Virus record (IMG/VR): IMGVR_UViG_3300017971_000185 | Coordinates: 433,195 to 497,194 of that record | Reading direction: 5' to 3' (one strand) | DNA length: 64,000 nucleotides | Part shown: positions 36,852 to 63,466 of the stretch, piece after piece | Position numbering within the stretch: the first letter of the stretch is position 1 | Layout: each line of letters opens with the position of its first letter | Position numbers and translations under genes: made by a program | Notes under the pieces: model-generated | Told to the model about the DNA's origin: nothing | Databases searched by the model: none | The model's input: the letters and a program-made list of their open reading frames with translations, nothing else

Positions 36852-37724
36852 ATGACGGTTGACAACGCAGTCAAACAGCGCATCATCAGCGACTACATCA
36901 AGACCGCTGCTGGGCGTCACAAGCTGGCCGCGTCCATGACGCAGCCTCTCCGCACGCGGCGTGACTACACGTCTGTGGGTCGGCGCACGTTCCTCGTGGA
37001 GCAACTCCCCGATGGCGCACTGCCGATCTACGACAAGGATCCCGATGTCACGGCGTATGTCGTCGGCGAGGAAGGCGAGAACATTCTCGCTGTCACCAAG
37101 CCGCGGCGCGTGGTGTTCCCACTCTTCGAGATCGCGAGCTTGCCCGAGATCCCGCTGACCCAGATCAAGGAGCGGCGCTTCGACCTGATCGAGCGTGCGC
37201 AAGATCTGGCGAGGGCTCAGATCCAAGCCGCGGAGGACGAGAGGGTGTTCGCCATCCTCGACGCTATCGCCACTGTTGGATTCGACTCGCTTCCGGGCCA
37301 GTTGAACCCCGACGTGCCGGTGGTCGCTCCCATTTCTGGTGCCGTCCTGGCCGACGCATTCAGTCTCATCGAGCGTCACGACCTTCGGGTTGCTCGTGTG
37401 TACATGAATGCGCGCGACTATGCCGACATCAGGAAGTTTGGTCGGGACATCTTGGATATCGAGAGTCAGCGCGACTTGCTGAAGACCGGTCTCCAGGCAA
37501 CCCTGTGGGGCGCGCAGATCATCACCAGCCGGCTCGTTCCGGTTGGCACGGTCTATGTGTGCTGCGAGCCCGAGTTGTTCGGACGCATCCCGGTGCGTAC
37601 AGAACTCACGGTCCTCTCGGCCGACGACCCCCGCGCCCGCACCATCGGGTTCTCAGTTTTTGAGAATCTCGGAATCGGTGCCTACAACCCGCGTGGGCTC
37701 ACTCGACTGTCTGTCACCCGCTAG
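36852..37724 (+). CDS. Major capsid protein (HK97/encapsulin-like fold)
   Basis: GGAGG RBS; 290 aa; VEQLPDGALPIYDKD, FPLFEIAS.PEI, RAQIQAAED; strongly biased codons; followed by a terminator. Confidence 0.82.
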   Translation: MTVDNAVKQRIISDYIKTAAGRHKLAASMTQPLRTRRDYTSVGRRTFLVEQLPDGALPIYDKDPDVTAYVVGEEGENILAVTKPRRVVFPLFEIASLPEIPLTQIKERRFDLIERAQDLARAQIQAAEDERVFAILDAIATVGFDSLPGQLNPDVPVVAPISGAVLADAFSLIERHDLRVARVYMNARDYADIRKFGRDILDIESQRDLLKTGLQATLWGAQIITSRLVPVGTVYVCCEPELFGRIPVRTELTVLSADDPRARTIGFSVFENLGIGAYNPRGLTRLSVTR

Positions 37725-47459: not shown

Positions 47460-47825
47460 ATGAACAAGACGGACAAGATCCCGACCAACCGACGATCTCC
47501 GGCTGCTACGCTGGCGTATTTGGCTCACGAAGCGTGGGATGGGCATTCCGCTCTGATCGTTCACGGCGGCATCCGAGGTTCGGGGCCCTCAGAGCATCGA
47601 GCGTCGATTCTCCGGTTCTTTTGGAAACAGCGTCGGCCGGGAGCTTTCATCGAGCAACAGTCTCCTGAGGTGCGCCAGCGTTTGCGTGAGCTTAGGTCTG
47701 ACGACATAGCGAACGTTGGTGCGTTTCCAGATTGGTACGCGGCGGACGAATCCCCCGTAGGACGGGTCTGGAAACTGCCGGGTTCCAGAGATCGAAGCGG
47801 AGGGACGTACAATGACGCGTACTGA
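47460..47825 (+). CDS. Hypothetical protein, paralog of 59219-59566
   Basis: About 84% aa identity by manual alignment (RRSPAATLA.LAHEAW..VGAFPDWY). Confidence 0.8.
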   Translation: MNKTDKIPTNRRSPAATLAYLAHEAWDGHSALIVHGGIRGSGPSEHRASILRFFWKQRRPGAFIEQQSPEVRQRLRELRSDDIANVGAFPDWYAADESPVGRVWKLPGSRDRSGGTYNDAY

Positions 47826-50532: not shown

Positions 50533-51197
50533 TGCCAAGTGTTTACTTTCAGGGCGACTTCGCCCACTTTTCCAACCCGCTGCTGAAGGCCGAGGGGACT
50601 ACCTTTCCCGGCCCTCCGCCTTCGGCTCTCCGCGGAGCCATTGAAAACATCCTGTTCAAGATGGGCGTCTACGTGGATGTCCGCCGCATCACGTACCACC
50701 GGCCGATTCGGACGATGAACTTCAAGACGAACGGCCTCAAACATGCGGTAGGCATGTCGCAGATCACGCTCCCGGATGCCCATCAGATGAACAACACGTT
50801 GCTCTACGACGTGGCCTATACAGTGGACTTCGATCTGCGCTTGTGTTGGCGTGACCGAGAGACCCAAGAGATCGTTAAGTTCGATGAGAGGGTGCTGGAG
50901 AGCCAGGATCTTCGGAAGTACATGGCGATGTACGAGAAGTATATCCGCCTGGGTAAGTGTCAGCACCCGCCTTGGCTGGGGTCGAAATTCTGCGAAGCTC
51001 TGTTCAGGGCACCCCGGCCCGAGGACACGCCGATTCAGGAGTCGCGGGACTTGGGGATGATGACGCACGGCATCGAGTACCGTAAGGCGGGGAACATCAC
51101 CCATGTCTTTCATCCGGTGATGAGAGACGGGGTTGTAGAGGTGGACTCGTTCTTCGATGTTCTCAAGGCCCGCTACGGGTTGAGGGCGGGTCAATGA
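50532..51197 (+). CDS. cas5: Type I-C Cas5 (Cas5c/Cas5d)
   Basis: GDFAHFSNP..PPPSALRGAIENI, LLYDVAY, PPWLG, DLGMM, PVMRDGVVEV. Confidence 0.88.
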   Translation: MPSVYFQGDFAHFSNPLLKAEGTTFPGPPPSALRGAIENILFKMGVYVDVRRITYHRPIRTMNFKTNGLKHAVGMSQITLPDAHQMNNTLLYDVAYTVDFDLRLCWRDRETQEIVKFDERVLESQDLRKYMAMYEKYIRLGKCQHPPWLGSKFCEALFRAPRPEDTPIQESRDLGMMTHGIEYRKAGNITHVFHPVMRDGVVEVDSFFDVLKARYGLRAGQ

Positions 51198-52870
51198 TTC
51201 GTCTCGACACACTCGTTGCCTTGGGGCAACGGGAAAAACTCGGCTATCTGCTCGATGACCAGCGGCCCTATGGGGAAGTTGTGTTGGATGCGGAGGGCCA
51301 CATCATCACTGTTCGCAAATCCTCTGGGGCGGTTCCCGTCCCAGACTTGCCCAATCGCACCAACTCCGAGTTGCGCATTGGGATGTATGTCGAGAACGAG
51401 ATGTATCTCTTTGGGACGACTCCGAAGGAGTACAAGGACCCCACGAAGCCTAGGAAAGCGCTGGAGCACGCTGCTGAAGCCTATGCCAAGATCGCCAAGG
51501 AAGTGCGGATCAAAGCCACACAGGCGGTCGCGCGGTTCTACGACTTGTCTCTAAGGGGCAAGCACAAGGTGCCGAAGGGGTGGCGATTTCAGCGGTATGT
51601 GTTTGTCTATAAGGACCAATACCTGCCCAGCGTTCCGCAGCTTCGCCCTGTGATTGAGAAATTTGTAGATGCCATTCCTAGCGTGGACAGCATCGAAAGG
51701 CAGTGCTTGATTACGGGAGAGTGGGTGCGGTGTCAGACGACGCCCCACGCAAACACCAAAGGACTTAGCTCCAACTCCAGTGGAGCGTCCTTTGTGAGTT
51801 TCAATGGGACAAGTCAGTACCAGGGGCGTCCCGAGGATCGGTTCTTGACGGCTCCCATCGCCCCTGGTGTATCTCGACTCATGACTTCAGCGCTTTCGTG
51901 GTTGAGCCGGAATCGTAGAATCCAACTCACGCCCGATCTCAATGTCTTGGTCTGGACTGAGGAAGGCCACCCGCTAGAGGCTCTCGGGCCGAAGTTGTTT
52001 GCGCCAGAGAAGGAGTCCCGAGAACAGCGAACGAAACGCGAAGAGGAAGCCGTTGGTGACCTCTTCGCTCATCCTGAGTGGGATGAGAGCACGGAGGCCG
52101 CCTACCTCCTGACAACGACTGGGAATATGGGTCGCTTCGCGGTCCGTGAGTGGGAGGAAACGACTGTCGGCAGGCTCTCTGCCAATCTGAGGCGGTTCGT
52201 TCAGGACTTCACAGTCGAGATCACAGTTGGGGAAGAGGAAGTCCAAGCTCGTCACACGTCTCTCTCGCGGCTGTACGCAGCGTGGTCCGATAGGCAGGTG
52301 GTACACCGTGACATCCTTGCCCTAGCCAACATGGCGCTCAAAGGAATGCCGGTACCAGAGTGTGCGTGGCCCTCCGGTGCGCCAGAAACCATTATCCAGA
52401 AAGCCATCTTTCAAGCGTATAGGAAACGGAACATGGAGAATCCAGGAAATTTCACAGCGGACATCAGCGTAGACGGGCAGTCGAATGCTTACCGGATGGG
52501 ACGGGCTTGTGCCGTCATGGAGGACGCTCGGTACAGCGCGAACAGAGCCAACAGTCGGGGGGTGATCGCGCACAATGTGGTTGACAACCCGTCTGTTGGG
52601 TTTCACCGGGCGATGCAGTCCATCATCCACCATTTGCCCAAGCGCCCAGGCAATCAGTACGCTGAGAGTCTCAGCGTGTTCACCAGCGGGATCGAAATTC
52701 CTGATCGGTTTGCTGTTCGGGAGCAGAACGAGTTTTGGCTGGGGTATCTCTACGAGCAGGGCCGTCAAAGCTACTTGTATAGGCTGGGGCGCGATGCCAA
52801 GAGCGCCAAGAAGAGCGAGCAGGGCGCGGATGGCCAGGACGTAGACGCCAGGGCATTGCTTGATGATTGA
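51194..52870 (+). CDS. cas8c: Type I-C Cas8c (Csd1)
   Basis: CLITG..PH..KG..ASFVSFN, TSALSWL, VLVW, AYRMGR..FWLGY. Confidence 0.82.
   Translation: MIRLDTLVALGQREKLGYLLDDQRPYGEVVLDAEGHIITVRKSSGAVPVPDLPNRTNSELRIGMYVENEMYLFGTTPKEYKDPTKPRKALEHAAEAYAKIAKEVRIKATQAVARFYDLSLRGKHKVPKGWRFQRYVFVYKDQYLPSVPQLRPVIEKFVDAIPSVDSIERQCLITGEWVRCQTTPHANTKGLSSNSSGASFVSFNGTSQYQGRPEDRFLTAPIAPGVSRLMTSALSWLSRNRRIQLTPDLNVLVWTEEGHPLEALGPKLFAPEKESREQRTKREEEAVGDLFAHPEWDESTEAAYLLTTTGNMGRFAVREWEETTVGRLSANLRRFVQDFTVEITVGEEEVQARHTSLSRLYAAWSDRQVVHRDILALANMALKGMPVPECAWPSGAPETIIQKAIFQAYRKRNMENPGNFTADISVDGQSNAYRMGRACAVMEDARYSANRANSRGVIAHNVVDNPSVGFHRAMQSIIHHLPKRPGNQYAESLSVFTSGIEIPDRFAVREQNEFWLGYLYEQGRQSYLYRLGRDAKSAKKSEQGADGQDVDARALLDD
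52433..52870 (+). CDS. cas11: Putative Cas11c by internal translation of cas8c
   Basis: AGGA..CGGA RBS and in-frame ATG just before the SNAYRMGR segment, where type I-C Cas11 normally begins. Confidence 0.55.
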   Translation: MENPGNFTADISVDGQSNAYRMGRACAVMEDARYSANRANSRGVIAHNVVDNPSVGFHRAMQSIIHHLPKRPGNQYAESLSVFTSGIEIPDRFAVREQNEFWLGYLYEQGRQSYLYRLGRDAKSAKKSEQGADGQDVDARALLDD

Positions 52871-55070
52871 CGTGTGTCAATTCGTCACCGGCCTCTCCTC
52901 GGACAGAGGAGAGGCCGAATCTTCTGGCCCCGACTCTCTGTGGGAGCATCAGCAGTTTGGGTTCCTTGATGTAGTAGACCACATCCTGAATCGGAAGGAG
53001 AAGCAAGTTGGGCTGTCTGGCCAGCCAGGGTGTGGTAAGACGCGCCTTACGACGTATATTGCGGCTTACTTGGCCAAGTCTCCGGTGTCTCCTATCACTA
53101 GAGTAGTCGTTGTGGTCCCGACCCAGATCATTCGGGACCAGTACAGAGGACAGAAGTCTGTAGTCCGGTTTGGGGCTGTTGAGGACGTAGCTGGGGAGGG
53201 CCCGAACAACAAAGCTGTCATCTCGGTCCCTGACATTGACTTAGGGAAGCTGATAGACCCTATGGTGGCTGGTCCAAAATATCTCGTGGACCACGTCACA
53301 GGTGCCGGCAAGCCGAGAGTCATCCTTGCCACGACTATGGACACCTTTCGCAGAGCCCTAGATTGCATTGGCGACATGAGCCATGTGTTAGTCGTTCTCG
53401 ATGAGGCGCATCGGTTCCCTGTAGGAGAATTCAAAGCATGGGCAAAGGCCAGAGTCGCTTGTGAGGAGAAGAGTGCCACTATCCTTGCCACGACGGCTAC
53501 GATGTACCGAGCGGACGGGCTTCCGATTTGTCCTGGTGCGTACATACACCAAATTCCCCGGATCAAACTGATTGAGGCTGGCCTCTGCCCAAGTCGCTTT
53601 CCTGTAAAGGTTGTTCTCCTTCCCTCCGTCGCTAAGACAGCGACGGAGGTAGTGGATGTCCGTGTGAAAGGGGAAGGAACGGAAGGAACCCTTGTAGAGC
53701 TTCTGACCGATGACGATCTCCGTTTTGGGGTGCGGCATTGGGTTGGTCTGGGATGCCCGTTTGGCCTCATGCGATGCCAAACCCAGGCGTTGACCAAGCG
53801 CTTGAAAGAAATTGTCGAGGAGGAGTGTCCCCACCTGAAGGCTGAGGAGGTGGGGCGCCCCGTTGTGGATCTTTCGGGCAAAGAGGTAGACAAGATGTGG
53901 CCCGTTGTGGATCTTTCGGGTTCCAAGGTGAACAAGGCGTTGGAGGCCCAGATTGCGCATGATGGCCGTGTGCGGCATGCCAATGAGATACGGACACAGC
54001 TAGTTGTGGGCATTCGACGTGTTGAGTGTGGTTTCGACTGGCCTCCGGTATCTCATGTCTTCAACTTCGGGCTCATTTCGTCTGAGACCCTCCTGGCCCA
54101 GCTTCGAGGACGGGGTTGGCGTTCGAAGACGAGATACGAGGGCTACCCTGAGCGGTTTCGGGATGAGGCGTGGCTCATCATGTTTGTGCCGACTGTGTCA
54201 GAGGAAGCTCGAACGGAGTTTCTGAGGAGCCCTGATCATCTCAAGCTGTTGATGATCATCGCGGCGACCACGGTCAATGAAGAGGCAGGTACTCTGCTGT
54301 CGTTCATCCATGATGAGATCCAGAAGGGGTTGTCGCGGTATGTGCGTGGGTACCGGGACCAGTTGCAGGTCATCCGTATCCTGGGGGCCCTCAACCCTGA
54401 GCCCAGAGAGATGGACGAAATACGGGCTGATCTTGGAAAGATCGAGACTCGGCTCGGAGGCGATGTGTCCGTTTCGGACTACATCAGAGAGATTGTCTTA
54501 GAGTCGCGGGACGAGAAGAAGCGTGGGGTCGTGAAGAGAAAGTGGTCGAGACGACGGAAGCTCGGAGCCCTGATTCTTTTGTTGGGGCAGAAGGGTCAGT
54601 CCAAGAAAGAGACCGCGCGGCTGATTCGGGAGCTTCTGGACAAGAAGAAATCGGTTACGCTCGTGGAGAGTCCTGAGCAGGTTTCAGATGAGGTTCGCTC
54701 CGTGCTTGCAGATGCTCTCAATCAGTTGGTTGAGAAGCATGGCGACATTGTTACCTTCACGGACACATACGAGGAGATGGCGGCCACCATGAACACCGAT
54801 GTGGACACTATCCGTCGCATGCAGCGAGAGGTGGACCGTCTGACACAATTCAAGCCTCGCAGCTATCAGGTTGCTGTTGAGGCTGTTAGCCAAGAGTTGG
54901 TTCACTGCGGAAGGCGGTGGAAGGTTCTCCAGGACCTTTCCGGGCCTCTTGGCTTGGACCCAGGGACCTACACAATGCGTCATCTCGATCGCGATCTACG
55001 ACATCAGGTGTTGAAAGGCCAGCCAGAGGACATCAACAGTTTGAGAGACTTGAGGCATGCGTTTCGGTAA
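52860..55070 (+). CDS. SF2 (DEAH) helicase without HD nuclease domain
   Basis: LWEHQ, GQPGCGKT, LDEAH, TAT, VECGFDWP, QLRGRGWR; motif I starts ~50 aa from the N-terminus. Confidence 0.8.
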   Translation: MMIDVCQFVTGLSSDRGEAESSGPDSLWEHQQFGFLDVVDHILNRKEKQVGLSGQPGCGKTRLTTYIAAYLAKSPVSPITRVVVVVPTQIIRDQYRGQKSVVRFGAVEDVAGEGPNNKAVISVPDIDLGKLIDPMVAGPKYLVDHVTGAGKPRVILATTMDTFRRALDCIGDMSHVLVVLDEAHRFPVGEFKAWAKARVACEEKSATILATTATMYRADGLPICPGAYIHQIPRIKLIEAGLCPSRFPVKVVLLPSVAKTATEVVDVRVKGEGTEGTLVELLTDDDLRFGVRHWVGLGCPFGLMRCQTQALTKRLKEIVEEECPHLKAEEVGRPVVDLSGKEVDKMWPVVDLSGSKVNKALEAQIAHDGRVRHANEIRTQLVVGIRRVECGFDWPPVSHVFNFGLISSETLLAQLRGRGWRSKTRYEGYPERFRDEAWLIMFVPTVSEEARTEFLRSPDHLKLLMIIAATTVNEEAGTLLSFIHDEIQKGLSRYVRGYRDQLQVIRILGALNPEPREMDEIRADLGKIETRLGGDVSVSDYIREIVLESRDEKKRGVVKRKWSRRRKLGALILLLGQKGQSKKETARLIRELLDKKKSVTLVESPEQVSDEVRSVLADALNQLVEKHGDIVTFTDTYEEMAATMNTDVDTIRRMQREVDRLTQFKPRSYQVAVEAVSQELVHCGRRWKVLQDLSGPLGLDPGTYTMRHLDRDLRHQVLKGQPEDINSLRDLRHAFR

Positions 55071-55689
55071 GGCCAAGGAAGTTTCGCGGGAGAACAATCT
55101 CCTTCACGTGATGAACAGCTATTTGCTGTTCTCGGGCGGCAAGATGCGAGTCGATTGGCTGGAGGTGCCGGGCGAAGGCTCTCCGATGGTGAGAATCCTT
55201 CGATCCTATCTCGTACCGGGCGTGTCCAAGCTCGTTTGTTTGGATCGTAACGCCGAGTACGTCCGGGAGGGCGAGGAGCAATACGGGAGTGAGATCTGCG
55301 AGTGGGTTTTGGCCGATGACTTGTTTGCCGAGCTAGCTAATTCACCGGACAAGTACGCTAACGTAGGGGTTCTGAATGTCGATCTCTACAACAGCCTTCG
55401 TCTGCTCGAATTCCCCGAACAGATGCGGATCGTCATGGAGTTTGCCACACGCCAGTTCTGGGCGATCGGGGCCTTCATGGTGTTTCTGAACTACTCGATG
55501 CGAGGCAGTGTTCGCGAGGAGTTTGCTCAAGACGTGATCAAGACTCTGGAGCCTTATCTAGATTTGTCACAGGTTGATCTCACTGATGAGGGCTACCTGT
55601 ACAAAGGAGGAACGCCTGACCAACCAGGCAACCGGAGATTGAATCTTCGGATACACCTAGGACCAACAAGGACACCGAACAATGAGTAA
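55057..55689 (+). CDS. Putative class I SAM-dependent methyltransferase-like protein
   Basis: Rossmann-like order WLEVPGEGS (motif I), LVCLDRN (acidic end of beta2), VLNVDLY, VFLNYS. Confidence 0.45.
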   Translation: MRFGKAKEVSRENNLLHVMNSYLLFSGGKMRVDWLEVPGEGSPMVRILRSYLVPGVSKLVCLDRNAEYVREGEEQYGSEICEWVLADDLFAELANSPDKYANVGVLNVDLYNSLRLLEFPEQMRIVMEFATRQFWAIGAFMVFLNYSMRGSVREEFAQDVIKTLEPYLDLSQVDLTDEGYLYKGGTPDQPGNRRLNLRIHLGPTRTPNNE

Positions 55690-56020
55690 GAAGAACGATG
55701 ATCTGGAGGCGGTTCGTGTGATCGCTGATGCGCTTGAACCGTTTGATGATGTCGTCAGGGAGCGTATTCTGAAATGGGCATGTGAGCGGGTCGGGATGCA
55801 CCCCAAGGAGATCAAGATCATACATGAGACACAAACTGCCTATTCGGAAGACGGTGGGGGTGGGAAGAGCCCCGCCGAGAAGGCAGCCAGGACCAGGAAG
55901 GCCAATGCTGAGAAGCGCTCTGAGGCCGCCAGGAAAGCGAACAAGACCAGGGGGAAGAAGGGGCGATCCGAGGCCGCAAAGAAGGCAGCGGCTACGCGTC
56001 GTGCTTGTCAGGCTGCCTAG
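55682..56020 (+). CDS. Small protein with basic histone-H1-like AxKAxxTR repeats
   Basis: AEKAARTRK, EAARKANKTRG, EAAKKAAATRR. Confidence 0.65.
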   Translation: MSKKNDDLEAVRVIADALEPFDDVVRERILKWACERVGMHPKEIKIIHETQTAYSEDGGGGKSPAEKAARTRKANAEKRSEAARKANKTRGKKGRSEAAKKAAATRRACQAA

Positions 56021-56026
56021 AGGCAG

Positions 56027-56076
56027 AAAAGCACGCTACGGGTCGCGTGAGCGCCTCCTAGTTTTGCGTGCCTTTT
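56027..56076 (+). terminator. Hairpin closing the cas operon
   Basis: AAAAGCACGC..GCGTGCCTTTT inverted repeat after the last stop. Confidence 0.45.
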
Positions 56077-56229
56077 CCTGAGGTTTCCTTCTGCGGGGCG
56101 ATTGCGAGTACAACGAGCTTTCTGACATTCGCAGAGTAGAACACGTCAGCGCTGTTCAGGCGCGCGATTTCACCCCTCGTGCATAACCTGCGATTACGAG
56201 CAATGATTTCAGCAGGTTCTAAGCCAAGG

Positions 56230-56558
56230 GTTTCCGCCCTGTTACGGGGCGGTTGCGATTACAAGGAAGAGCCGCTGGACCTGAGCGCAGCCACCAAGCT
56301 GTTTCCGCCCTGTTACGGGGCGGTTGCGATTACAAGAGCCGTGAACGAGCAGGAATGCGCCCAAATCCTGGCCGAGTTTCCGCCCTGTTACGGGGCGGTT
56401 GCGATTACAAGGCCATGAGCTTGGCGCTCATTGATTCGAGGGCCGCTGCGTTTCCGCCCTGTTACGGGGCGGTTGCGATTACAAGATCGAGATTCTGCGG
56501 TGGACACGCGCCAGCATGTTGAGTTTCCGCCCTGTTACGGGGCGGTTGCGATTACAAG
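56230..56558 (+). CRISPR. Block A: 5 identical 36-nt repeats
   Basis: GTTTCCGCCCTGTTACGGGGCGGTTGCGATTACAAG at 56230, 56301, 56376, 56450, 56523; spacers 35, 39, 38, 37 nt. Confidence 0.97.
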
Positions 56559-56592
56559 GATTGCACGGCCTACGAGGGGTTTCCGCTCTCTC

Positions 56593-56836
56593 TTCCGTCT
56601 CCGGCCTCGAATCGAGGAGGCGGTTTCGATTGCAACGCACGCGGATGCGAAACTCCGTCTTCTCCAAGTCTGTCTCCGCGGGAGGCGGTTTCGATTGCAA
56701 CATGTCGTGCGTCGAGACATCCAGAGTGGGTTCCGTCTCCGCGGGGAGGCGTTTCGATTGCAACACCAACGGCGGTCAGGGAGTTGGAGCATGGGATTGC
56801 GTTCCGTCTCCGCGGGGAGACGGTTTCGATTGCAGT
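56593..56836 (+). CRISPR. Block B1: 4 variant repeats
   Basis: Consensus GTTCCGTCTCCGCGGGGAG(G/A)CGGTTTCGATTGCAAC at about 56593, 56668, 56730, 56801. Confidence 0.85.
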
Positions 56837-56863
56837 ATGTTGGTGGTGGAATCCTCGCCGAGT

Positions 56864-56893
56864 AGAGCCCCCTCAAACGAGGGGGCTCTTTTT
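56864..56893 (+). terminator. Intrinsic terminator inside the array
   Basis: AGAGCCCCCTC-AAAC-GAGGGGGCTCT (11-bp stem) followed by TTTT. Confidence 0.85.
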
Positions 56894-56939
56894 CCCAGTC
56901 TTCGATTACAACTACGCCATTCGGCCCCAAGGCGATCTC

Positions 56940-57345
56940 GTTTCCGCCCTCCTGCGGAGCGGTTGCGATTACAACGCTCTCACCGGCCTCAGTGTTCTCT
57001 ACTCCTTCTGGTTTCCGCTCCTCTGCGGAGCGGTTGCGATTACAACTACCGGACCGACAGCTACACCAATCTGATCAGAAAATCGAGCACCGTCGCATCG
57101 GACAGTGGTTTCCGCTCCTCTGCGGAGCGGTTGCGATTACAACTAATCGGTTTCCACCGCCGAGGGAGAACCCCGCACGTTTCCGCCCTCCTGCGGGGCG
57201 GTTGCGGTTACAACGTGACGGTCACAGGTCGAATTTCGTCTGCCCGGTCCGCCCTCCTGCGGGGCGGTTGCGATTACAACGCTACCGAGAGATCGCGGAA
57301 CGGTTGGGTGTTTCCGCCCTCCTGCGGGGCGGTTGCGATTACAAC
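56940..57345 (+). CRISPR. Block C: 6 repeats
   Basis: GTTTCCGC(C/T)C..TGCGG(G/A)GCGGTTGCGATTACAAC at 56940, 57011, 57108, 57179, 57247, 57310. Confidence 0.93.
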
Positions 57346-57376
57346 CTGCACGCTCAGCCGCCCACGAGGGTACGAG

Positions 57377-57841
57377 GTTCGTCTCCGAGGGAGACGGTTT
57401 CGATTGCAACCAGATGTGGGATGCAGTGTCCGTGTCCGCCTCTCACGGAGGCGGTTTCGATTGCAATTTCGTTGGCTCTCACTGATCGGTTTTTCGTGTT
57501 CCGTCTCCGAGGAGGCGGTTTCGATTGCAACCCCACTGACCTCAGCGCCATACGACGGTTCCGTTCCGTCTCCGAGGAGACGGTTTCGATTGCAACCTCC
57601 ACCCACGTCGTGTAGGTGCCGCCCCGTAGAGGGGCGGTTTCGATTATAACACGCGGGACTCGGGAAGAAGTTGAACCCGGATCGTTGGGTCCGCCCTTTT
57701 GGGCGGTTTCGATTACAACAATCAAGGTGGTACGTCATTTCGGGAGAGGGAGCGATTGCGATTACAACCGCATGATGTCCTGGATGGGCTTGATCGTTGA
57801 GGTTTCCGCTCTCTGCGCTACGGAGGGCGGTTGCGATCAAC
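57377..57841 (+). CRISPR. Block B2 plus hybrid/degenerate repeats
   Basis: B-type at 57377, 57434, 57498, 57563; hybrids at 57616, 57689; degenerate at about 57746 and 57802. Confidence 0.85.
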
Positions 57842-58016
57842 GATTTCGAACGGGTACGAGCCGGAGATTCAGCGAACGAAGAAATTGTTGGGTCCCCTCA
57901 TTCATCCCAAAATCGTGTGGGAAGTCAGACAGGGGGAAAGCCCCGTGTGGGAAACGGACGGCAACCCTCTCAAGGAAGCGTGGAAAACAATCCACGGATC
58001 GGGGTAGAATGAGCCC

Positions 58017-58526
58017 ATGCGTCGTCGTGAGATACTGACTGGTTTGGCTCTGGCCCCTTGTGTGGGCCTCCTGCCCTCCATCGCGAGAGGGTCCGAGGGG
58101 TTGAGCATTCCTGAGAAGCAAAGGCGCATTGCCAAACTCCTTAAGAGTCCTGAGGGGCGCCGTAGGCTGACTGCGAGCATGACTCACCCTCGACGTTGTG
58201 GGGGATTGGGCTATTCCACGGTGCCGCAGGGGCGACCGTTCCGTCCCGGTTACGAGTTTGTCCGAGGGGACCTGGCCCTGTTCACCGCGGGAGGGCCCGT
58301 CGAGTCGGTGACGTACACCTTGGTGGGTCCGTTGTCGTCCAAATGGAAATACGGTTACGCGATCGGCCCGGTGGATCGCGTTCCGGTCAACCCGGCACCG
58401 GGGGAGTACTACCCTGCGCTTCATGTTCCTTTGAGCGCGTTGCCGGGCGAGTACCAGATCCGATGGAAGGTGCGTTTGGAGAATGGCGAGGTTCGGGATC
58501 CCGTTCAGCCGTTTTGGGTAGGATAG
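58017..58526 (+). CDS. Protein with Tat-like N-terminus and MCP N-arm homology
   Basis: MRRREILTGLALAP; KQRRIAKLLKSPEGRRRLTASMTHP is 13/25 identical to MCP residues 8-32. Confidence 0.65.
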   Translation: MRRREILTGLALAPCVGLLPSIARGSEGLSIPEKQRRIAKLLKSPEGRRRLTASMTHPRRCGGLGYSTVPQGRPFRPGYEFVRGDLALFTAGGPVESVTYTLVGPLSSKWKYGYAIGPVDRVPVNPAPGEYYPALHVPLSALPGEYQIRWKVRLENGEVRDPVQPFWVG

Positions 58527-58883
58527 ATGCCTTTCGATCTGACCAAAGAGGAAGCGCAGGCGCTTCTCGACGTGATCGTTCACTTCCAGGTGTTGAGCCA
58601 CACTCCCGAACCCGAGTGTGGTCGCCTTCGTTCCGTGGAGCAGAAGCTCGAAAGGTTCGTGGGAGGCGAGCCGTCCGAGCCAGAGACGCCTCTCTCCGAC
58701 CAAGTGCTACTGCGTGTCCAGTTTGGGATGCTTGGTGTGATCGAAGCAGGTGAGTTGGCCGGACGGACGCGAGATCAGGTTCTCGATGAGTTTCCGATGG
58801 ACAGGTCCGTGTTGGAGCCGTTGTTGGCTGGGGACTTTGATGCGGTGCGGAAGGCTGCGCGGGCGCGGAAGGAAGTGGGCTAG
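58527..58883 (+). CDS. Hypothetical protein
   Basis: 118-aa ORF abutting the upstream stop. Confidence 0.55.
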   Translation: MPFDLTKEEAQALLDVIVHFQVLSHTPEPECGRLRSVEQKLERFVGGEPSEPETPLSDQVLLRVQFGMLGVIEAGELAGRTRDQVLDEFPMDRSVLEPLLAGDFDAVRKAARARKEVG

Positions 58884-58904
58884 AGGAACGGAAGGCGTGA
58901 CAGC

Positions 58905-59222
58905 ATGGAATGCACGTGCGAAATAGAGTGTTGTGACGGAGAGCCTATCCTCGACTACGAGGCTGTCCGGCTCACGGTGCAGGAGAGCCCTCTATGCGAT
59001 GAGTGCGGTGAGACGATTCCGAAGGGAGCGTTTGCGGAGCGCGTGACGGGGTTGTGCGAGGGCGAGTTTGTCTGCTGGTACACCTGCGAGGTATGCTTGC
59101 GGATCAGAGACGATCTCATGGGCCGGTGTTTCTGCCATGGCACGATGCGAGATGACCTGCGAAGCTGCCTTGGTGTAGACTACGTTACGGGCGAGGTTGA
59201 TGAGGAATGGGAGGCGGCATGA
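58905..59222 (+). CDS. Cys-rich zinc-finger protein
   Basis: CDECGETIPKG..TCEVC. Confidence 0.65.
   Translation: MECTCEIECCDGEPILDYEAVRLTVQESPLCDECGETIPKGAFAERVTGLCEGEFVCWYTCEVCLRIRDDLMGRCFCHGTMRDDLRSCLGVDYVTGEVDEEWEAA
59160..59211 (+). repeat. 52-nt direct repeat, right copy
   Basis: Matches 47200-47251 with 3 mismatches. Confidence 0.9.
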
Positions 59223-59566
59223 ACAAGATGGATGAGATCCCAACCAGCCGACGATCCCCAGCCGCCACCCTGGCACACCTAGCCCATGAAGCATGGGAGG
59301 GGCACTCGGCCCTGATCGTTCACGGCGGCATCCGAGGGACGGCGCCTCCGTCAGAGCATCGGGCGCGGATACTCCGCTCGTTTTGGAAGCAGCGTCGGCC
59401 GGGAGCGTTCATCGAGCAGCAGCCACCAGGGGTACGCCAGCGTTTGCGGAACCTCCGATCCGAAGACATCGCCAATGTCGGCGCATTCCCGGATTGGTAC
59501 GCTGAGGAAGAACCCCCAGTAGGCCGCGTCTGGAAACTGCCGGGTTTCCGAGACGACATCCTCTAG
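59219..59566 (+). CDS. Hypothetical protein, paralog of 47460-47825
   Basis: ATGA overlap; about 84% aa identity to the left copy. Confidence 0.8.
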   Translation: MNKMDEIPTSRRSPAATLAHLAHEAWEGHSALIVHGGIRGTAPPSEHRARILRSFWKQRRPGAFIEQQPPGVRQRLRNLRSEDIANVGAFPDWYAEEEPPVGRVWKLPGFRDDIL

Positions 59567-60103: not shown

Positions 60104-61216
60104 GTGACCAAGGAAAGCAAATTCAAGCAACGCGTGCGTGATCGTATGGAGAGGACGGGCGAATCCTACGCTACTGCTCGACGCAACGAGAATGAGGCTG
60201 CGGGTTTGATCGAGGAGATGAAGGCAGTGGATGCTGAGCTTAGTGAGCTAGAGAAAGCTCAGCTAGAGCGCGAGAAGGTCAATCGTCAGTGGGTGAAGGA
60301 CAACCCAGGGCTCAAGGTTGTGACGCTGACGTTGACGCATAACGAGCACGGGACGCCGACGATTCACGTGTCGGGTCCTGAGCTTACGTCCATCCAGATC
60401 ACCCAGCCGCCTGACGTATACGTGGAAGCCATCCGACAGGCGTACCAGGACAACGAGTGGGCGAAGAACCCGAAGGACGATCTTGGTGATCTTCCCGAGT
60501 GTCGTTTGGAGGACTCCAAGCGCAAAGAGGACTTTGTCTACGAAAGCGGACCCGCGCCCGAGGGCACGATTCATGAGGACTTTGATGCGTTGGTGGCGGC
60601 GCTGTACAAGGTGAAGGGCCGTGTCATGTCTGTGGATCATCCGAACCATGGGCTTGTCGGGTTTGTGGAAACCGAGACGGACAAGTACCACTGGATACGG
60701 ATCAAGCCGACTCTTGCCTGGACTGAAACGGTCGCTTGGGAACATCTAGAGCTTTGGGGCCTGATGCAGACGCCGCGAGGGCGTTGCAAGGCCGCGGGTC
60801 TTTTCAGCCAGGAAGAGATGCTGGCGAAGGTGTCGTCGGCTCTAGAGGGCTGGTGGAAGAGTGCCTCTCCGTTTCCGACCAATCCTGATCCTGCGGAGAT
60901 CGTTGCTCCGCTTTCTGGAGAAGCGTTGGCTGATGTGTTTGCTCACGTCGAGAAATTCGATGTTTCGGTTGAGGCGATTGTGATGTCGGCGCGCAGTTTC
61001 CATGAGGTTTGTAAGCACGCAAGCGACAGCATCCGCTTGGAAACTCGTGCCCGGCTGATGAAGAAAGGGCTAATGGGTCGCCTGTGGGATGCTCTCGTGA
61101 TCACGACCCGAGAGATCGATGAGGATGAGATATGTTTCTTGGGTCGGGATCCCGAGGGGAAGTGGGTGTGTCACTCGCTTCGTGTGATTCGGCCATCTGC
61201 GCAGGGTTCAGAGTGA
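60104..61216 (+). CDS. Protein with C-terminal partial MCP paralog
   Basis: N-terminal KFKQRVRDRMERTGESYATARR; 60902-61111 is 28/70 identical, ungapped, to MCP 37323-37532. Confidence 0.8.
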   Translation: MTKESKFKQRVRDRMERTGESYATARRNENEAAGLIEEMKAVDAELSELEKAQLEREKVNRQWVKDNPGLKVVTLTLTHNEHGTPTIHVSGPELTSIQITQPPDVYVEAIRQAYQDNEWAKNPKDDLGDLPECRLEDSKRKEDFVYESGPAPEGTIHEDFDALVAALYKVKGRVMSVDHPNHGLVGFVETETDKYHWIRIKPTLAWTETVAWEHLELWGLMQTPRGRCKAAGLFSQEEMLAKVSSALEGWWKSASPFPTNPDPAEIVAPLSGEALADVFAHVEKFDVSVEAIVMSARSFHEVCKHASDSIRLETRARLMKKGLMGRLWDALVITTREIDEDEICFLGRDPEGKWVCHSLRVIRPSAQGSE

Positions 61217-63466
61217 CCTTCCGTGTTTTCGGAAGGCGATCCCGAGATTCCTTGCCCTGAGCTTGTCGTCTGCCCAGCACAGCCTGCATTCGCTACACGT
61301 CAACCCGGACAAGGTCTGCGCCGGGCAAGGGGCCAGCGACCAACCCGTCCCAGGTACCTGGAATACCTGACCGTCGGGAGATAGAGCAGGCACAATGACG
61401 GCAGGCGCGTACCCCATTGACACGACCCTCTTGATGTCTTCCACCGTGTCACAGGAGCCAAGGACGCTCGCCCGCCGAAACGCGGCGCGTGGGATCCACG
61501 CTGCCGAGTGAGTGTACGTCCACAGAGCCGTTCCCCTGTTCGCCAACCACCAGTCCGCGAGCCCAGCAACCATTTTTGCCTGACCGACCGTCGTCACGTC
61601 TCCACCACCATCGTGTAGACATAAGGCGAGCCCTTGGGGATCGGGAAATTTCTCCTTCGCAAGTTTGGCCTCAGCCGCGATAATTTCGTCGGCCGTCCAG
61701 TTTCCGTCTTTCGCTATTCGCTCAAGCCGCTTTGAGTTGCAAGGGTGTGCGTAGCATCCGTTGTCGCGCAGGGGGCAACTTGGCGGGCATGTTTGTTTGA
61801 TGGGAATCGAGGTTGAGATGATTTGAGAGATCGGCTTGGAGCCTCGGATCGGTGCATGTATTGCGACGGGTGGTTGGCGCGTTTTTGAAGAGATCCCGTG
61901 TTTGCGGAGATGGCAGATCACAGTTGATGGGGACACTTCCAGAGCTTGAGCGATGGTTTGATTGGTTGCTCCCTCTGCTACCATCTGTCGAAGAACATCC
62001 GCATCGAGGGGCTTGGGTTTCGGCCGCTCGATCCCATGTTTGCGGAGATGGTACGCCACAGTTGATGGGGACACTTCCAGAGCCCGAGCGATGGTCCGAT
62101 TGGTTGCTCCCTCTGCCACCATTTGTCGAAGAACATCCGCATCGAGCTTTCGAGCGGTGGTTTGGTTGGGTTTCTCTGCCACAACCTTCCGCTCGATCCC
62201 GTGTTTGCGGAGATGGTACGCCACAGTTGATGGGGACACTTTCAGAGCCCGCGCGATGGCCTGATCGGTTGCTCCCTCTGCTACCATCTGTTGAAGAACG
62301 TCCGCATCGAGAGTTTTCTGTTTCGGCCGCTCGATCCCGTGTTTGCGGAGATGGTACGCCACAGTTGATGGGGACACTTTCAGAGCCCGCGCGATGGCCT
62401 GATCGGTTGCTCCCTCCATCGTCATTTGTCGAAGAACATCCGCATCGAGGGGCTTGGGTTTTGGCCGCTTGATCCCGTGCTTGTGGAGATGGTACGCCAC
62501 AGTCGAGATAGACACTTTCAGAGCCCGAGCGATGGTCCGATTGGTTGCTCCCTCCATCACCATTTGTCGAAGAACATTCGCTTCTATGGTGGTTTTGCAG
62601 CGCTGCGATGGTGGAGGGGCGGCCTTCCAAAGCTCCTGTTGCCATTCGGAGAAACTGTCGAAATCGCGTCCGTTAGTGTAAGCCCATCGTTTGAGGAGAC
62701 GGCTGCGTTTGGGTTCGGGCGTCTTGCACCAAGCGATGTAATTCAGCAGCCATCGAAAGTTGGTCAGGGTTTTCGGAATCTCTGCGGGAAACCTTCGTGG
62801 GAAGATTTGTCGGAGGATTCTCTGAAGAGTCTCTTGTTTCCAGGCTCTAGTCTCGATCTGGAAAGGCGCGTACCACCCTGCCTTTTTTCCAGCAGACATC
62901 CAGGCTTGGATTTGAGCCTTGGTCTGGTCGGCCGATGCGTATTCTCTGCGGTACGATTTAGAGAAAAAATGCTTTCCGTCCGGCAGGCTTTCCAGCAAGC
63001 GTTTCTGTTTCGGTTCGATTTTTCCGAGAACGTATCGCCTGCGCCATGTTTCTAGCCACCATTTCCACTTTTTCTGGGAGCGTAGTTCCCAAAGAGATTG
63101 AGACTTTGTTAGGTGCTTGAGTCGGGTGATCCTGTCAAGCCATCGGGCGTGTGGGTATTTGCCGTCATTGTGGACTCGGTTGTTCCAGGTCCACCCGTCT
63201 AAGCTCTCAAGCAGCCGTATGCGATCTTGTGTTAGCTCTCCGTTGCGGTACATTCGGCGCTGATAAGCTATCCATTTCCCTATTGGTCGTCCGTCTCTTC
63301 GATCCGTGTAGCGGATTTGGTCGGCGCCACCACGTTCTTCCGATTCGGCAAGCACTTCGTAGTACGTCCCCATCCACTGGGCTGTCGAAAACGGTTGTGA
63401 TCGCTTCCGCCATCTTCGAAGGTCCCTCATCCAGTCTTTTTCGACGCACTGATCTCGGCTTGGCAT
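61208..63466 (-). CDS. Fusion: helicase-associated (HA)-like repeats + 5 HTH repeats + Cys-rich gp88-like domain
   Basis: IGKWIAYQRRMY..RIRLLESLDGWTW; 5x LDADVLRQM..HLRKHGI; TCPPSCPL..GCYA, LHDGGGD, WTYTH, CPAQT..CSECRLC. Confidence 0.75.
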   Translation of the reverse strand: MPSRDQCVEKDWMRDLRRWRKRSQPFSTAQWMGTYYEVLAESEERGGADQIRYTDRRDGRPIGKWIAYQRRMYRNGELTQDRIRLLESLDGWTWNNRVHNDGKYPHARWLDRITRLKHLTKSQSLWELRSQKKWKWWLETWRRRYVLGKIEPKQKRLLESLPDGKHFFSKSYRREYASADQTKAQIQAWMSAGKKAGWYAPFQIETRAWKQETLQRILRQIFPRRFPAEIPKTLTNFRWLLNYIAWCKTPEPKRSRLLKRWAYTNGRDFDSFSEWQQELWKAAPPPSQRCKTTIEANVLRQMVMEGATNRTIARALKVSISTVAYHLHKHGIKRPKPKPLDADVLRQMTMEGATDQAIARALKVSPSTVAYHLRKHGIERPKQKTLDADVLQQMVAEGATDQAIARALKVSPSTVAYHLRKHGIERKVVAEKPNQTTARKLDADVLRQMVAEGATNRTIARALEVSPSTVAYHLRKHGIERPKPKPLDADVLRQMVAEGATNQTIAQALEVSPSTVICHLRKHGISSKTRQPPVAIHAPIRGSKPISQIISTSIPIKQTCPPSCPLRDNGCYAHPCNSKRLERIAKDGNWTADEIIAAEAKLAKEKFPDPQGLALCLHDGGGDVTTVGQAKMVAGLADWWLANRGTALWTYTHSAAWIPRAAFRRASVLGSCDTVEDIKRVVSMGYAPAVIVPALSPDGQVFQVPGTGWSLAPCPAQTLSGLTCSECRLCWADDKLRARNLGIAFRKHGRSL
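61884..62587 (-). repeat. Five tandem HTH-coding repeats (period 138 nt, one 165 nt)
   Basis: Near-identical units, e.g. CATCCGCATCGAG recurring at about 61997, 62135, 62299, 62437. Confidence 0.92.

What the first reader, a model, noticed from the sequence alone, without database searches (positions are those of the whole stretch)
58017..58526. Tat-like signal fused to a copy of the MCP N-terminal arm
Seen: MRRREILTGLALAP.. followed by a 25-aa segment 13/25 identical to MCP residues 8-32, directly downstream of the array. Inference: an exported or membrane-anchored capsid mimic, a decoy for capsid-sensing defences, or an assembly modulator.
Basis: partly seen in the sequence, partly recalled or inferred. 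Interest (0 to 1): 0.62.

Follow-up and report, generated by a model that had tools for sequence, protein, structure and literature searches.

The report
Exported phage protein built from virion pieces
A half-megabase phage encodes a small protein with a twin-arginine export signal, a short copy of its own capsid protein's N-terminal arm and an Ig-like domain copied from a likely neck protein; it is one of three such signal-plus-capsid-fragment genes in this genome, and their function is unknown.

Summary
In detail: ORF 58017..58526 (169 aa) starts MRRREIL + an 18-residue uncharged stretch, and residues 34-58 match MCP residues 8-32 at 13/25 (14/28 over 34-61).

The match is more than chance. 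Pairwise E is 5e-6, and an N-arm profile gives E 0.003 against all 5,718 ORFs of the 497-kb phage genome.

- Most of the protein (residues 72-169) is an Ig/macroglobulin-like beta-sandwich. It is a paralogue of the N-terminal domain of a highly conserved ~300-aa phage protein, probably the head-tail adaptor.
- The signal and this domain are conserved in three homologue clusters under purifying selection. The N-arm stretch lies in a variable linker and is absent or vestigial in them.
- At least 9 of 69 distant family representatives also carry RR signals.

The resemblance is nevertheless part of a pattern. Of the four credible RR-signal ORFs in this genome, three carry MCP fragments, including a conserved 90-aa family made of signal plus MCP residues 7-64 (E 1e-17).

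Best reading: a Tat-exported accessory protein built from virion-protein modules, acting at the envelope, possibly in superinfection exclusion. A decoy or assembly role is not excluded. Function is untested.

The parts
58017..58526 (+). P0001: 169-aa ORF plus stop codon (signal, linker, beta-sandwich domain)
   Evidence: Homologues are 45-51% identical over the full length. dN/dS in the domain is 0.18-0.22. A public gene caller started it at M55 (115 aa, P0003), but the upstream part is conserved at protein level in the homologues.
58017..58091 (+). Twin-arginine-type signal or anchor, residues 1-25 (MRRREIL, 18 uncharged residues, S-I-A then R-G)
   Evidence: Rule-based check. The family has invariant L7 T8 G9 P14 C15 P20 S21 G25. 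dN/dS is below 1. A variant contig shows three synonymous changes plus L12M. No TAT HMM hit.
58116..58199 (+). MCP N-arm-like segment, residues 34-61, inside the variable linker (residues 26-71)
   Evidence: 14/28 identical to MCP residues 8-35, E 5e-6. Profile E 0.0028 genome-wide. Predicted as two short helices with pLDDT about 57. Absent from P0005 and P0006.
58230..58523 (+). C-terminal Ig/macroglobulin-like beta-sandwich domain, residues 72-169
   Evidence: AF2 pLDDT 82-94. Paralogue of P0002 residues 1-105 (E 2.4e-11; 2.2e-10). The family has 72 representatives at E<=1e-3. The equivalent P0002 domain matches macroglobulin domains at Z 8.5-9.4.
57981..58010 (+). Promoter-like site TGGAAA-18-TAGAAT; the -10 hexamer ends 6 nt before the ATG, which suggests a leaderless transcript
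   Evidence: L004, L008 and the RR-signal ORF T42 have the same geometry, a TAnnnT hexamer 6 nt before the ATG. The geometry is not enriched genome-wide (19 observed against 10-18 in shuffles). Consensus match only.
36852..37724 (+). Major capsid protein gene; the N-arm that is copied is residues 8-35 (36873-36956)
   Evidence: phrog_2522 E 5.9e-48. About 89-100% identical in 586 matching stretches of IMG/VR, of which the best 80 were fetched as loci.
60104..61216 (+). 370-aa ORF; residues about 235-338 (60806-61117) are a diverged copy of MCP residues 127-229
   Evidence: tblastn 34/104 identical, E 6e-14 genome-wide. phrog_2522 E 0.0016.
58527..59222 (+). Two small downstream genes (118 aa and 105 aa) that appear to travel with P0001
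   Evidence: The P0005 contig has 118-aa and 103-aa genes in the same positions. This rests on gene lengths only, because no DNA was available. The 105-aa protein gives weak zinc-finger-like PHROG hits.
56077..57840 (+). CRISPR array upstream of P0001 (context only, not part of the gene)
   Evidence: Type I-C cas genes lie at 49564-52870. Homologues of P0001 are not next to arrays.

Best explanation
P0001 is a real accessory gene of a ~0.5-Mb phage, under purifying selection. It encodes a small modular pre-protein with three parts:
1. A twin-arginine-type signal peptide, residues 1-25.
2. A variable linker, residues 26-71. In this phage lineage it holds a diverged copy of the MCP N-arm (MCP residues 8-35).
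3. An Ig/macroglobulin-like beta-sandwich, residues 72-169. It is a paralogue of the N-terminal domain of the phage's strongly conserved ~300-aa protein P0002, most likely the head-tail adaptor.

Shown:
- The architecture.
- Homology of both passenger modules to virion proteins.
- Conservation of the signal and the domain, and variability of the linker.
- The family's repeated use of RR signals.

Inferred:
- The domain descends from a virion protein that folds in the cytoplasm, so it is exported already folded by Tat. It is then either released after cleavage at S-I-A or left anchored by the uncleaved signal.
- It acts at the cell envelope by binding an envelope component. The most likely effect is to mask a binding site against superinfecting relatives or to protect progeny, as other phage-encoded exported accessory proteins do.
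- The N-arm stretch is a captured module that the family's core function does not need.

P0001 belongs to a wider set in this genome of RR-signal proteins whose passengers are MCP fragments.
For: Real gene:
- Homologues in three other clusters, with the stop codon at the same place and dN/dS 0.18-0.22 in the domain and 0.16-0.64 in the signal.
- A variant contig shows three synonymous changes plus one conservative change in the signal.

Signal:
- RR-x-(I/L)-L-T-G plus 16-21 uncharged residues in all members.
- At least 9 of 69 distant representatives of the domain family pass the TatP expression and have a long uncharged stretch.
- Among members with a short N-terminal extension I saw RR signals and no Sec-type signal.

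Domain:
- Paralogy to P0002, E 2e-10 to 2e-11.
- Confident beta-sandwich model.
- P0002 has more than 1,200 relatives at about 60% identity, and is hit by an intein and flanked by homing endonucleases, as essential phage genes often are.
- The helical part of P0002 resembles portal-tail adaptor proteins: Z 7.0-7.6 against 8i4m_G, 7qoj_D, 9k09_d and 6tba_2A.

Accessory and mobile:
- Absent from 80 MCP loci and from five related 290-618-kb genomes.
- The homologues sit in different genomic contexts.
- Own promoter-like site.
- It lies beside the phage's type I-C CRISPR-Cas locus.

Linker: the N-arm stretch is missing in P0005 and P0006.
Against: - No experiment or dedicated predictor (SignalP, TatP, DeepTMHMM) was available.
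- The two TAT HMMs do not recognise P0001, and Ile replaces the usual F/L/V/M in the motif.
- An envelope-binding or exclusion role is argued by analogy only. No ligand or host is known.
- The adaptor assignment of P0002 rests on middling structural scores (Z about 7) and a PHROG hit at E 0.23.
- Three of four RR-signal ORFs carry MCP pieces. This suggests the MCP fragments themselves are selected, which a pure 'Ig-domain adhesin' model does not explain.
Confidence: 0.45

Rival explanations
1. Decoy or sponge for host defences that sense conserved virion proteins. The MCP N-arm, MCP E-loop and adaptor-domain copies bind a sensor in the cytoplasm. The RR signal then parks the complex at the Tat receptor or membrane, or co-exports it by the hitchhiker route.
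For: - Three of the four credible RR-signal ORFs of the genome carry MCP-derived segments: T314, E 1e-17; P0001, E 0.003; T42, E 4e-4.
- The T314 family (signal plus MCP residues 7-64) is conserved, syntenic and under purifying selection.
- The same N-arm module is fused to a zinc finger in a 618-kb relative.
- Tat exports folded proteins and bound partners (PMC13673990).
- The gene lies in an accessory region next to the phage CRISPR-Cas locus.
Against: - No sensor is known.
- A capsid fragment could trigger a sensor instead of blocking it, as the Gol peptide of T4 does with Lit (my own knowledge).
- The N-arm stretch is dispensable in P0001's closest homologues.
- No binding evidence (one search gave no verdict).
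Confidence: 0.17
2. Capsid-assembly modulator or membrane tether. The N-arm-like segment inserts into MCP or scaffold contacts and the hydrophobic N-terminus holds it at the membrane, which nucleates, places or inhibits procapsid assembly (the phage's own or a competitor's).
For: - N-arms and E-loops are the extended elements that make contacts between subunits and with scaffold in HK97-fold capsids (established knowledge).
- In the P0005 contig the homologue lies about 1.3 kb from a LAGLIDADG gene, which follows a partial gene that is probably the MCP.
- T314 has a polybasic stretch right after its hydrophobic segment. By the positive-inside rule this would keep its N-arm copy in the cytoplasm (inference).
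Against: - The family is sporadic. It is absent from most relatives whose MCPs are about 90% identical, so it is not part of the assembly core.
- The N-arm piece is not conserved within the family.
- Co-folding of the MCP with P0001 residues 26-169 gave no support; this is no evidence either way.
Confidence: 0.1
3. Evolutionary by-product. The MCP-like stretch is a neutral scrap moved by the abundant homing-endonuclease and recombination traffic of this genome, and has no role of its own. The ORF survives only because of its Ig-like domain.
For: - The genome holds 121 paralogous ORF pairs, many of them partial.
- MCP and P0002 are flanked by homing endonucleases.
- Other MCP scraps occur without a signal: F288, and the 370-aa ORF.
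- The segment is old and degenerate: 57% DNA identity, third codon positions 43%.
Against: The co-occurrence with RR signals (three of four such ORFs) is far beyond chance. The T314 family keeps its N-arm copy under purifying selection, dN/dS 0.17-0.39.
Confidence: 0.18
4. The N-terminus is not a Tat signal. It is a Sec/YidC-inserted signal anchor, or a lipoprotein signal that uses the invariant Cys15.
For: - No TAT HMM hit for P0001.
- The hydrophobic stretch is fairly hydrophobic (mean KD 1.9).
- Cys15 is invariant in the close family.
Against: - The residue before Cys is always Pro (LAPC, VLPC, LVPC, VAPC). This does not fit the lipobox, which has G, A or S at -1 (my own knowledge).
- The RR-x-hydrophobic-L motif is conserved across close and distant members.
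- Another RR ORF of the genome passes TIGR01409 (19.4 against a cut-off of 16.7).
Confidence: 0.1

Closest known systems
Ig-like domains displayed on phage virion proteins (T4 Hoc, T5 pb10, and Ig-like additions to tail and neck proteins)
   Same: The C-terminal domain is a roughly 100-residue Ig/macroglobulin-like beta-sandwich. It is clearly homologous to a domain at the N-terminus of a conserved, probably structural, phage protein. Some relatives carry two copies in tandem (P0151).
   Different: Here the domain sits behind an export signal in a separate small accessory protein. Hoc and pb10 have no signal and bind capsids in the cytoplasm. No capsid-binding module was shown.
Phage-encoded exported superinfection-exclusion or receptor-masking proteins (T5 Llp, phi80 and HK022 Cor, TP-J34 Ltp)
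   Same: It is a small, non-enzymatic, signal-bearing accessory gene with its own promoter-like site. It is sporadically distributed and sits in variable regions.
   Different: Those proteins are mostly Sec-exported lipoproteins with a canonical lipobox, which P0001 lacks. None is known to be built from copies of the phage's own virion proteins. Function is untested here.
Tat substrates with cleaved (class I) or uncleaved anchoring (class III, Rieske-type) signals
   Same: An RR motif, a moderately hydrophobic uncharged stretch, and a basic residue after it (classes as in PMC13673990).
   Different: No cofactor-binding residues are conserved: the family has no invariant His or Met, and its only invariant Cys (C15) lies inside the signal. 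The origin is viral. The TAT HMMs do not score P0001.
HK97-fold major capsid protein N-arm (NF042927 / phrog_2522 type)
   Same: Residues 34-61 align with MCP residues 8-35 at 50% identity. An N-arm profile detects the segment.
   Different: No E-loop, P-domain or A-domain follows, so the protein is not an HK97-fold protein.
Capsid-derived peptides or mimics that act away from the capsid (T4 Gol peptide with Lit; SaPI CpmB mimicking the scaffold)
   Same: A short piece related to a morphogenetic protein is expressed outside its parent protein.
   Different: Those cases act in the cytoplasm and have defined partners. Here there is an export signal and no known partner. The comparison comes from memory and is a lead only.

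Membership tests
Twin-arginine (Tat) signal peptide | RR motif that fits the consensus within the N-terminal region (TatP default RR.[FGAVML][LITMVF]) | tested here: inconclusive
   P0001 has RR-E-I-L, and Ile is outside the default set. The homologues (RRSLL, RRDLL), T314, T42, T156 and nine distant members pass strictly.
Twin-arginine (Tat) signal peptide | An uncharged, moderately hydrophobic h-region of at least about 12-13 residues after the motif | tested here: met
   18 uncharged residues, mean Kyte-Doolittle 1.92.
Twin-arginine (Tat) signal peptide | c-region with small residues at -3 and -1, and often a basic residue | tested here: met
   S-I-A followed by R-G at residues 21-25, read directly from the sequence. 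No cleavage predictor was available.
Twin-arginine (Tat) signal peptide | Recognition by the curated HMMs (PF10518, TIGR01409) | tested here: not met
   No hit for P0001, its homologues or T314 at E<=10. T156 passes TIGR01409 (19.4 against 16.7). T42 is just below it (14.6).
Twin-arginine (Tat) signal peptide | Export that depends on TatABC and on the RR pair | not testable with these tools
   Needs reporter fusions in wild-type and tat-mutant cells.
HK97-fold major capsid protein | N-arm sequence similarity | tested here: met
   14/28 identical, E 5e-6. Profile E 0.0028 over 5,718 ORFs.
HK97-fold major capsid protein | E-loop, P-domain with spine helix, and A-domain | tested here: not met
   The rest of the protein is a beta-sandwich homologous to the P0002 N-domain. 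No capsid family hit.
Unnamed beta-sandwich domain family shared with the N-terminus of P0002 (putative head-tail adaptor) | Significant sequence similarity and the conserved motifs (G-x-E-L-G-R-G-D-L; P-V-N-P-x-x-G-E-Y-Y; G-x-Y-x-I-R-W) | tested here: met
   E 2.4e-11 and 2.2e-10. Alignments A1 and A6. 72 representatives at E<=1e-3.
Unnamed beta-sandwich domain family shared with the N-terminus of P0002 (putative head-tail adaptor) | Ig/macroglobulin-like beta-sandwich fold | tested here: met
   pLDDT 82-94 for residues 72-169. The P0002 domain scores Z 8.5-9.4 against macroglobulin domains. The Atlas and BFVD rows are generic Ig-like folds.
Bacterial lipoprotein (as in the Llp- or Cor-type exclusion proteins) | Lipobox [LVI][ASTVI][GAS]C at the end of the h-region | tested here: not met
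   Cys15 is invariant but always preceded by Pro, and ten more hydrophobic residues follow it. The lipobox consensus is from my own knowledge.
Capsid decoration protein (Hoc or pb10 type) | Binds assembled capsids and is present in virions | not testable with these tools
   Co-folding with the MCP gave no verdict. The export signal argues against it.

The most novel reading that the evidence does not exclude
This lineage of huge phages has a previously undescribed class of small proteins. In them, a twin-arginine signal (or in relatives a zinc finger) is fused to copies of the contact elements of conserved virion proteins: the MCP N-arm, the MCP E-loop and the Ig-like domain of the adaptor. 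They would work as baits that capture a host or rival-phage factor recognising virion proteins, and then remove it from the cytoplasm through Tat or hold it at the membrane. P0001 would be a two-bait member of this class.
Probability: 0.15. Interest if true: 0.85.

Novelty: new variant of a known kind. Interest (0 to 1): 0.6.

Why it matters
Phage genes with export signals usually act at the cell envelope, for example in exclusion, lysis or host takeover. Huge phages are full of unassigned small genes.

This case shows a repeated building principle: an RR-type signal joined to copies of pieces of the phage's own most conserved structural proteins. I found no description of it in two literature searches.

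If the pieces are exported, it would be a new route by which phages alter the envelope or block relatives. If they act as baits, it would be a new counter-defence logic that uses the ability of Tat to move folded complexes.

The work also gives a testable annotation for two large families of 'hypothetical' proteins: the ~300-aa putative adaptor with more than 1,200 members, and its free-standing or exported Ig-like domain.

Tried and rejected
Searches that gave nothing useful
- Pfam, PHROGs and NCBIfam give no family for P0001 or for its residues 60-169.
- tblastn against INPHARED phages gave only one weak hit, in the 485-kb uncultured phage LR745208, covering the domain.
- A PDB profile search with the P0002 family found nothing meaningful.
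- Foldseek on PDB and BFVD, and the Atlas search, gave only generic Ig-like folds. CopC and FetP appear among them.
- Two literature searches found no description of exported capsid fragments.

Ideas considered and rejected
- Metal binding: no His or Met is conserved, and the only invariant Cys lies inside the signal.
- Lipoprotein: Pro always precedes the Cys.
- Start at M55, as in a public gene call (P0003, 115 aa): the upstream signal is conserved in the homologues.
- A recent duplication of the MCP N-arm: DNA identity is only 57%, and 43% at third codon positions.
- Derivation of P0001's N-arm piece from the T314 gene: by my count on alignment A4 it is 9/28 identical to T314 against 14-15/28 to MCPs.
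- A conserved link to the CRISPR array: the repeats occur only in this phage's own loci.
- A conserved position beside the MCP: none of the 80 MCP loci (flanks of up to 10 kb) holds a homologue.
- A genome-wide leaderless promoter class: TAnnAT-N5-7-ATG occurs 19 times against 10-18 in shuffles.
- The N-arm-like motif in the small ORF upstream of the L008 homologue: not significant with the profile, E 0.49.

No verdict or no information
- Complex prediction of the MCP with P0001 residues 26-169 scored 0.00 and gave no verdict. It is no evidence for or against binding.
- Read laying was not informative on expression. The one RNA-library contig covers only 58890-59242, the neighbouring 105-aa gene, and comes from a diverged relative.
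Full report
**What the window is.** The window is the last 64 kb of a 497,194-bp IMG/VR virus record, which CheckV estimates as 94% complete. A nearly identical copy lies on a 372-kb contig. The same DNA is present in sediment and seawater metagenomes. Going along the window, the genes are:
- a structural block;
- the major capsid protein (MCP) at 36852..37724 (phrog_2522, E 5.9e-48);
- two LAGLIDADG homing endonucleases;
- a type I-C cas set: Cas7 at 49564-50532, Cas5 at 50532-51197, Cas8c/Csd1 at 51194-52870 and a helicase at 52860-55070;
- a CRISPR array at 56077-57840;
- the ORF in question at 58017..58526.

- The ORF gives 169 aa (P0001). It begins with MRRREIL, followed by 18 uncharged residues and S-I-A/R-G.
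- Residues 34-58 match MCP residues 8-32 at 13/25, as reported. BLASTP gives 14/28 for residues 34-61 against 8-35, with pairwise E 5e-6.
- The match survives larger search spaces: E 0.002 against all window ORFs and E 0.015 for tblastn of the MCP on the whole genome.
- A profile built from 32 MCP N-termini and the five T314-family proteins gives E 0.0028. It ranks P0001 third of 5,718 ORFs, behind the MCP and T314.
- DNA identity over the segment is 48/84, with 12/28 third positions the same. The copy is therefore old.

**The gene is real and starts at 58017.**
- The word search found three other clusters: P0004 (150 aa), P0005 (177 aa) and P0006 (127 aa). It also returned the window's own product, called from M55.
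- Reading the DNA upstream of the called starts shows that the true N-termini are MHRRSLLTG... in L004-L007 and MRRRDLLTG... in L008.
- In the corrected alignment, L7, T8, G9, P14, C15, P20, S21 and G25 are invariant, as is most of residues 75-167.
- dN/dS is 0.18-0.22 in the domain and 0.16-0.64 in the signal, with dS near saturation.
- A variant contig covering 57889-58087 shows three synonymous changes and L12M in the signal.
- A promoter-like TGGAAA-18-TAGAAT ends 6 nt before the ATG. L004, L008 and another RR-signal ORF of this genome, T42, also have a TAnnnT hexamer 6 nt before their ATG. This hints at leaderless transcripts, but the geometry is not enriched genome-wide.

**Most of the protein is not capsid-like.**
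- Residues about 72-169 are homologous to the first ~105 residues of a 320-aa protein encoded 45 kb away across the ends of the linear record (P0002; E 2.4e-11, 2.2e-10).
- The AF2 model of P0001 has a confident beta-sandwich at residues 72-169 (pLDDT 82-94). It has two low-confidence helices over the N-arm-like stretch and a disordered N-terminus.
- P0002 belongs to a family with more than 1,200 members at about 60% identity. The family has no Pfam domain or name and lies on contigs of up to 473 kb.
- P0002 is flanked by homing endonucleases, and in another phage its orthologue carries an intein. That is typical of essential, conserved phage genes.
- In the P0002 model, the N-domain matches macroglobulin/Ig-like domains (Z up to 9.4). 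Residues 116-222 match portal-tail adaptor proteins of cyanophages, crAss001 and the gene transfer agent at Z 7.0-7.6. There is also a faint PHROG connector hit (E 0.23).
- I therefore read P0002 as the probable head-tail adaptor carrying an Ig-like N-domain. This assignment is tentative.

**The family architecture is signal plus domain, and the N-arm piece is optional.**
- In the close family the linker between signal and domain varies from almost nothing (P0005) to 45 residues. The MCP-like stretch is absent in P0005 and P0006 and vestigial in P0004.
- The N-arm profile hits no other member of the domain family.
- Because family scans left the protein open, I ran the exhaustive profile search. 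It returned 72 representatives at E<=1e-3, only three of them close.
- Across these representatives the domain occurs at the N-terminus of longer proteins, alone, in tandem, behind a zinc finger (P0188), and behind RR signals.
- Nine of the 69 distant representatives pass the TatP expression and have an uncharged stretch of at least 12 residues. A tenth (P0166) is a variant.
- Among members with short N-terminal extensions I saw no Sec-type signal.
- Two such proteins sit on phage-like contigs.
- A domain that evolved to fold in the cytoplasm as part of a virion protein would be a natural Tat passenger. This step is inference.

**How Tat-like the signal is.**
- By rule, P0001 fails the TatP default expression only through Ile at the fourth position, while its homologues pass (PMC1182353).
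- The h-region and c-region fit.
- PF10518 and TIGR01409 do not detect P0001. They do detect T156 (above cut-off) and T42 (just below) in the same genome.
- The invariant Cys15 is always preceded by Pro, so a lipoprotein signal is unlikely.
- Whether the signal is cleaved or serves as an anchor (class I or class III in PMC13673990) cannot be told.

**The MCP resemblance is part of a pattern.** tblastn of the MCP on the genome finds several scattered fragments:

| ORF | Genome position | Makeup | MCP residues copied | Support |
|---|---|---|---|---|
| T314 (P0127, 90 aa) | 313898-314170 | MKRRTFIG... signal-like start, a polybasic run, then the copy | 7-64 | 30/58 identical, E 1e-17; also hit by NF042927 |
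| T42 (201 aa) | 42309-42914 | The clearest Tat-type signal, then the copy | 69-90 | Profile E 4e-4 |
| F288 (120 aa) | 288238-288597 | No signal | 69-92 | Profile E 1.6e-8 |
| 370-aa ORF | window 60104..61216 | No signal | 127-229 | E 6e-14 |

- A regular-expression scan of all six frames found seven hits, of which only four are credible RR-signal ORFs in the genome. Three of those four carry MCP-derived segments.
- T314 is a conserved family: four further members at 51-64% identity over the full length, all ending at the same MCP position.
- The T314 family is syntenic and under purifying selection (dN/dS 0.13-0.39).
- A 618-kb relative fuses the same N-arm module to a CxxCxGxG zinc finger (profile E 6.5e-10).
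- P0001's piece is closer to MCPs (14-15/28) than to T314 (9/28, my count on alignment A4), so it was probably captured independently.
- The genome also has many other partial duplications (121 paralogous pairs). Fragment traffic is therefore common, but its association with RR signals is not explained by that alone.

**Distribution.**
- The MCP is about 89-100% identical in 586 matching stretches of IMG/VR, of which the best 80 were fetched as loci.
- No P0001 homologue lies in those 80 MCP loci, which have flanks of up to 10 kb.
- Five related 290-618-kb genomes have only the P0002-type domain and a few short stand-alone copies.
- The homologues lie in different backbone contexts. In the P0005 contig the gene and two small downstream genes sit between a LAGLIDADG gene and a PAPS-reductase gene. 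In this genome the same trio follows the CRISPR array.
- Adjacency to the array is not conserved.
- P0001 is thus a mobile accessory gene.

**Mechanism.** The steps that are shown are the modular build, the homology of both passengers to virion proteins, selection on the signal and domain, and the repeated pairing of RR signals with this domain and with MCP pieces. The steps that are inferred are export of the folded domain by Tat and action at the envelope. I consider receptor or binding-site masking (superinfection exclusion, or protection of progeny) the single most likely role, at roughly 0.45 including the architecture. The rivals are:
- a bait for sensors of virion proteins, possibly disposed of through Tat (0.17);
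- a modulator or tether of capsid assembly (0.10);
- a neutral scrap in a protein kept for its Ig-like domain (0.18);
- independently of function, a non-Tat signal anchor (0.10).

Co-folding of the MCP with P0001 residues 26-169 gave no verdict and is not used as evidence.

**Comparison with known systems.**
- The protein is not an HK97-fold protein, not a canonical lipoprotein exclusion factor and not a demonstrable decoration protein (see the membership table).
- It works most like phage-encoded exported accessory proteins, and its domain is of the kind displayed on virion proteins.
- Its construction from copies of the phage's own virion proteins behind RR signals was not found in two literature searches.

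**Verdict.** I rate the finding a new variant of a known kind and give it interest 0.6. The wider pattern of three signal-plus-MCP-fragment genes, one of them a conserved family, is the most interesting part and deserves a systematic survey.

Noticed in passing
window 49564-57840: The phage carries a type I-C CRISPR-Cas locus: Cas7, Cas5d, Cas8c/Csd1 and a DEAD/ResIII helicase of 736 aa. It also has an array of about 24 repeats in at least three variants. The central palindrome of the repeat changes on both sides between variants (CCGCCC..GGGCGG, CCGCTCC..GGAGCGG, CCGTCTCC..GGAGACGG). No Cas1, Cas2 or Cas4 was looked for.
   Followed up: partly
G000:C1:313898-314170 (outside the window; L092:2899-3171): T314/P0127 is a 90-aa ORF between tRNA-Met and tRNA-Val/Arg. 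It consists of an RR signal-like start, a KRRKRKK run and a copy of MCP residues 7-64. It is a conserved, syntenic family under purifying selection, and every member ends at the same MCP position.
   Followed up: yes
G000:C1:42309-42914 and 288238-288597 (outside the window): Two more ORFs hold MCP E-loop-region copies (MCP residues 69-92). T42 has a clear Tat-type signal and lies just downstream of P0002 and a homing endonuclease. F288 has no signal.
   Followed up: partly
window 60104-61216: The C-terminal third of this 370-aa ORF is a diverged copy of MCP residues 127-229. Its N-terminus (K-x-R-V-R-D-R-M-E-R-T-G-E-S-Y-A-T-A-R-R) recurs in P0168, where it is fused to the Ig-like domain. This suggests shuffling of N-terminal tags and virion-protein pieces.
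   Followed up: partly
L100:1477-1773 (-), a 618-kb relative (G001): A 98-aa ORF joins a DnaJ-like CxxCxGxG zinc finger to an MCP N-arm-like module (profile E 6.5e-10).
   Followed up: partly
L010:10007-12325: The P0002 orthologue of a 126-kb viral contig is interrupted by an intein. The N-extein ends ...RDN and is followed by CLGGDTLV...; the intein ends ...VVSN and is followed by C. A homing endonuclease follows the gene. In G000, P0002 is flanked by homing endonucleases on both sides.
   Followed up: partly
window 37827-38810 and 39371-40765: Two LAGLIDADG_2 homing endonuclease genes with HTH domains lie directly downstream of the MCP gene. A PAPS-reductase/DUF3440 gene follows at 40808-42055.
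   Followed up: no
window 61208-63466 (-): A 752-aa protein with five tandem near-identical HTH (GerE/LuxR-like) units of about 46 aa, a helicase-associated domain and a C-terminal DUF7227.
   Followed up: no
window 59207-59566 and 47460-47825; window 58905-59222: The 119-aa gene two genes downstream of P0001 has an 83%-identical paralogue 12 kb upstream. The 105-aa cysteine-rich gene has a 41%-identical paralogue at G000 about 304 kb. The region is an island of duplicated accessory genes.
   Followed up: no
G000:C1:156190-157155 (outside the window): T156 is the fourth RR-signal ORF (321 aa) and the only one that passes the TIGR01409 cut-off. It has no detectable paralogue or virion-protein fragment.
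   Followed up: partly
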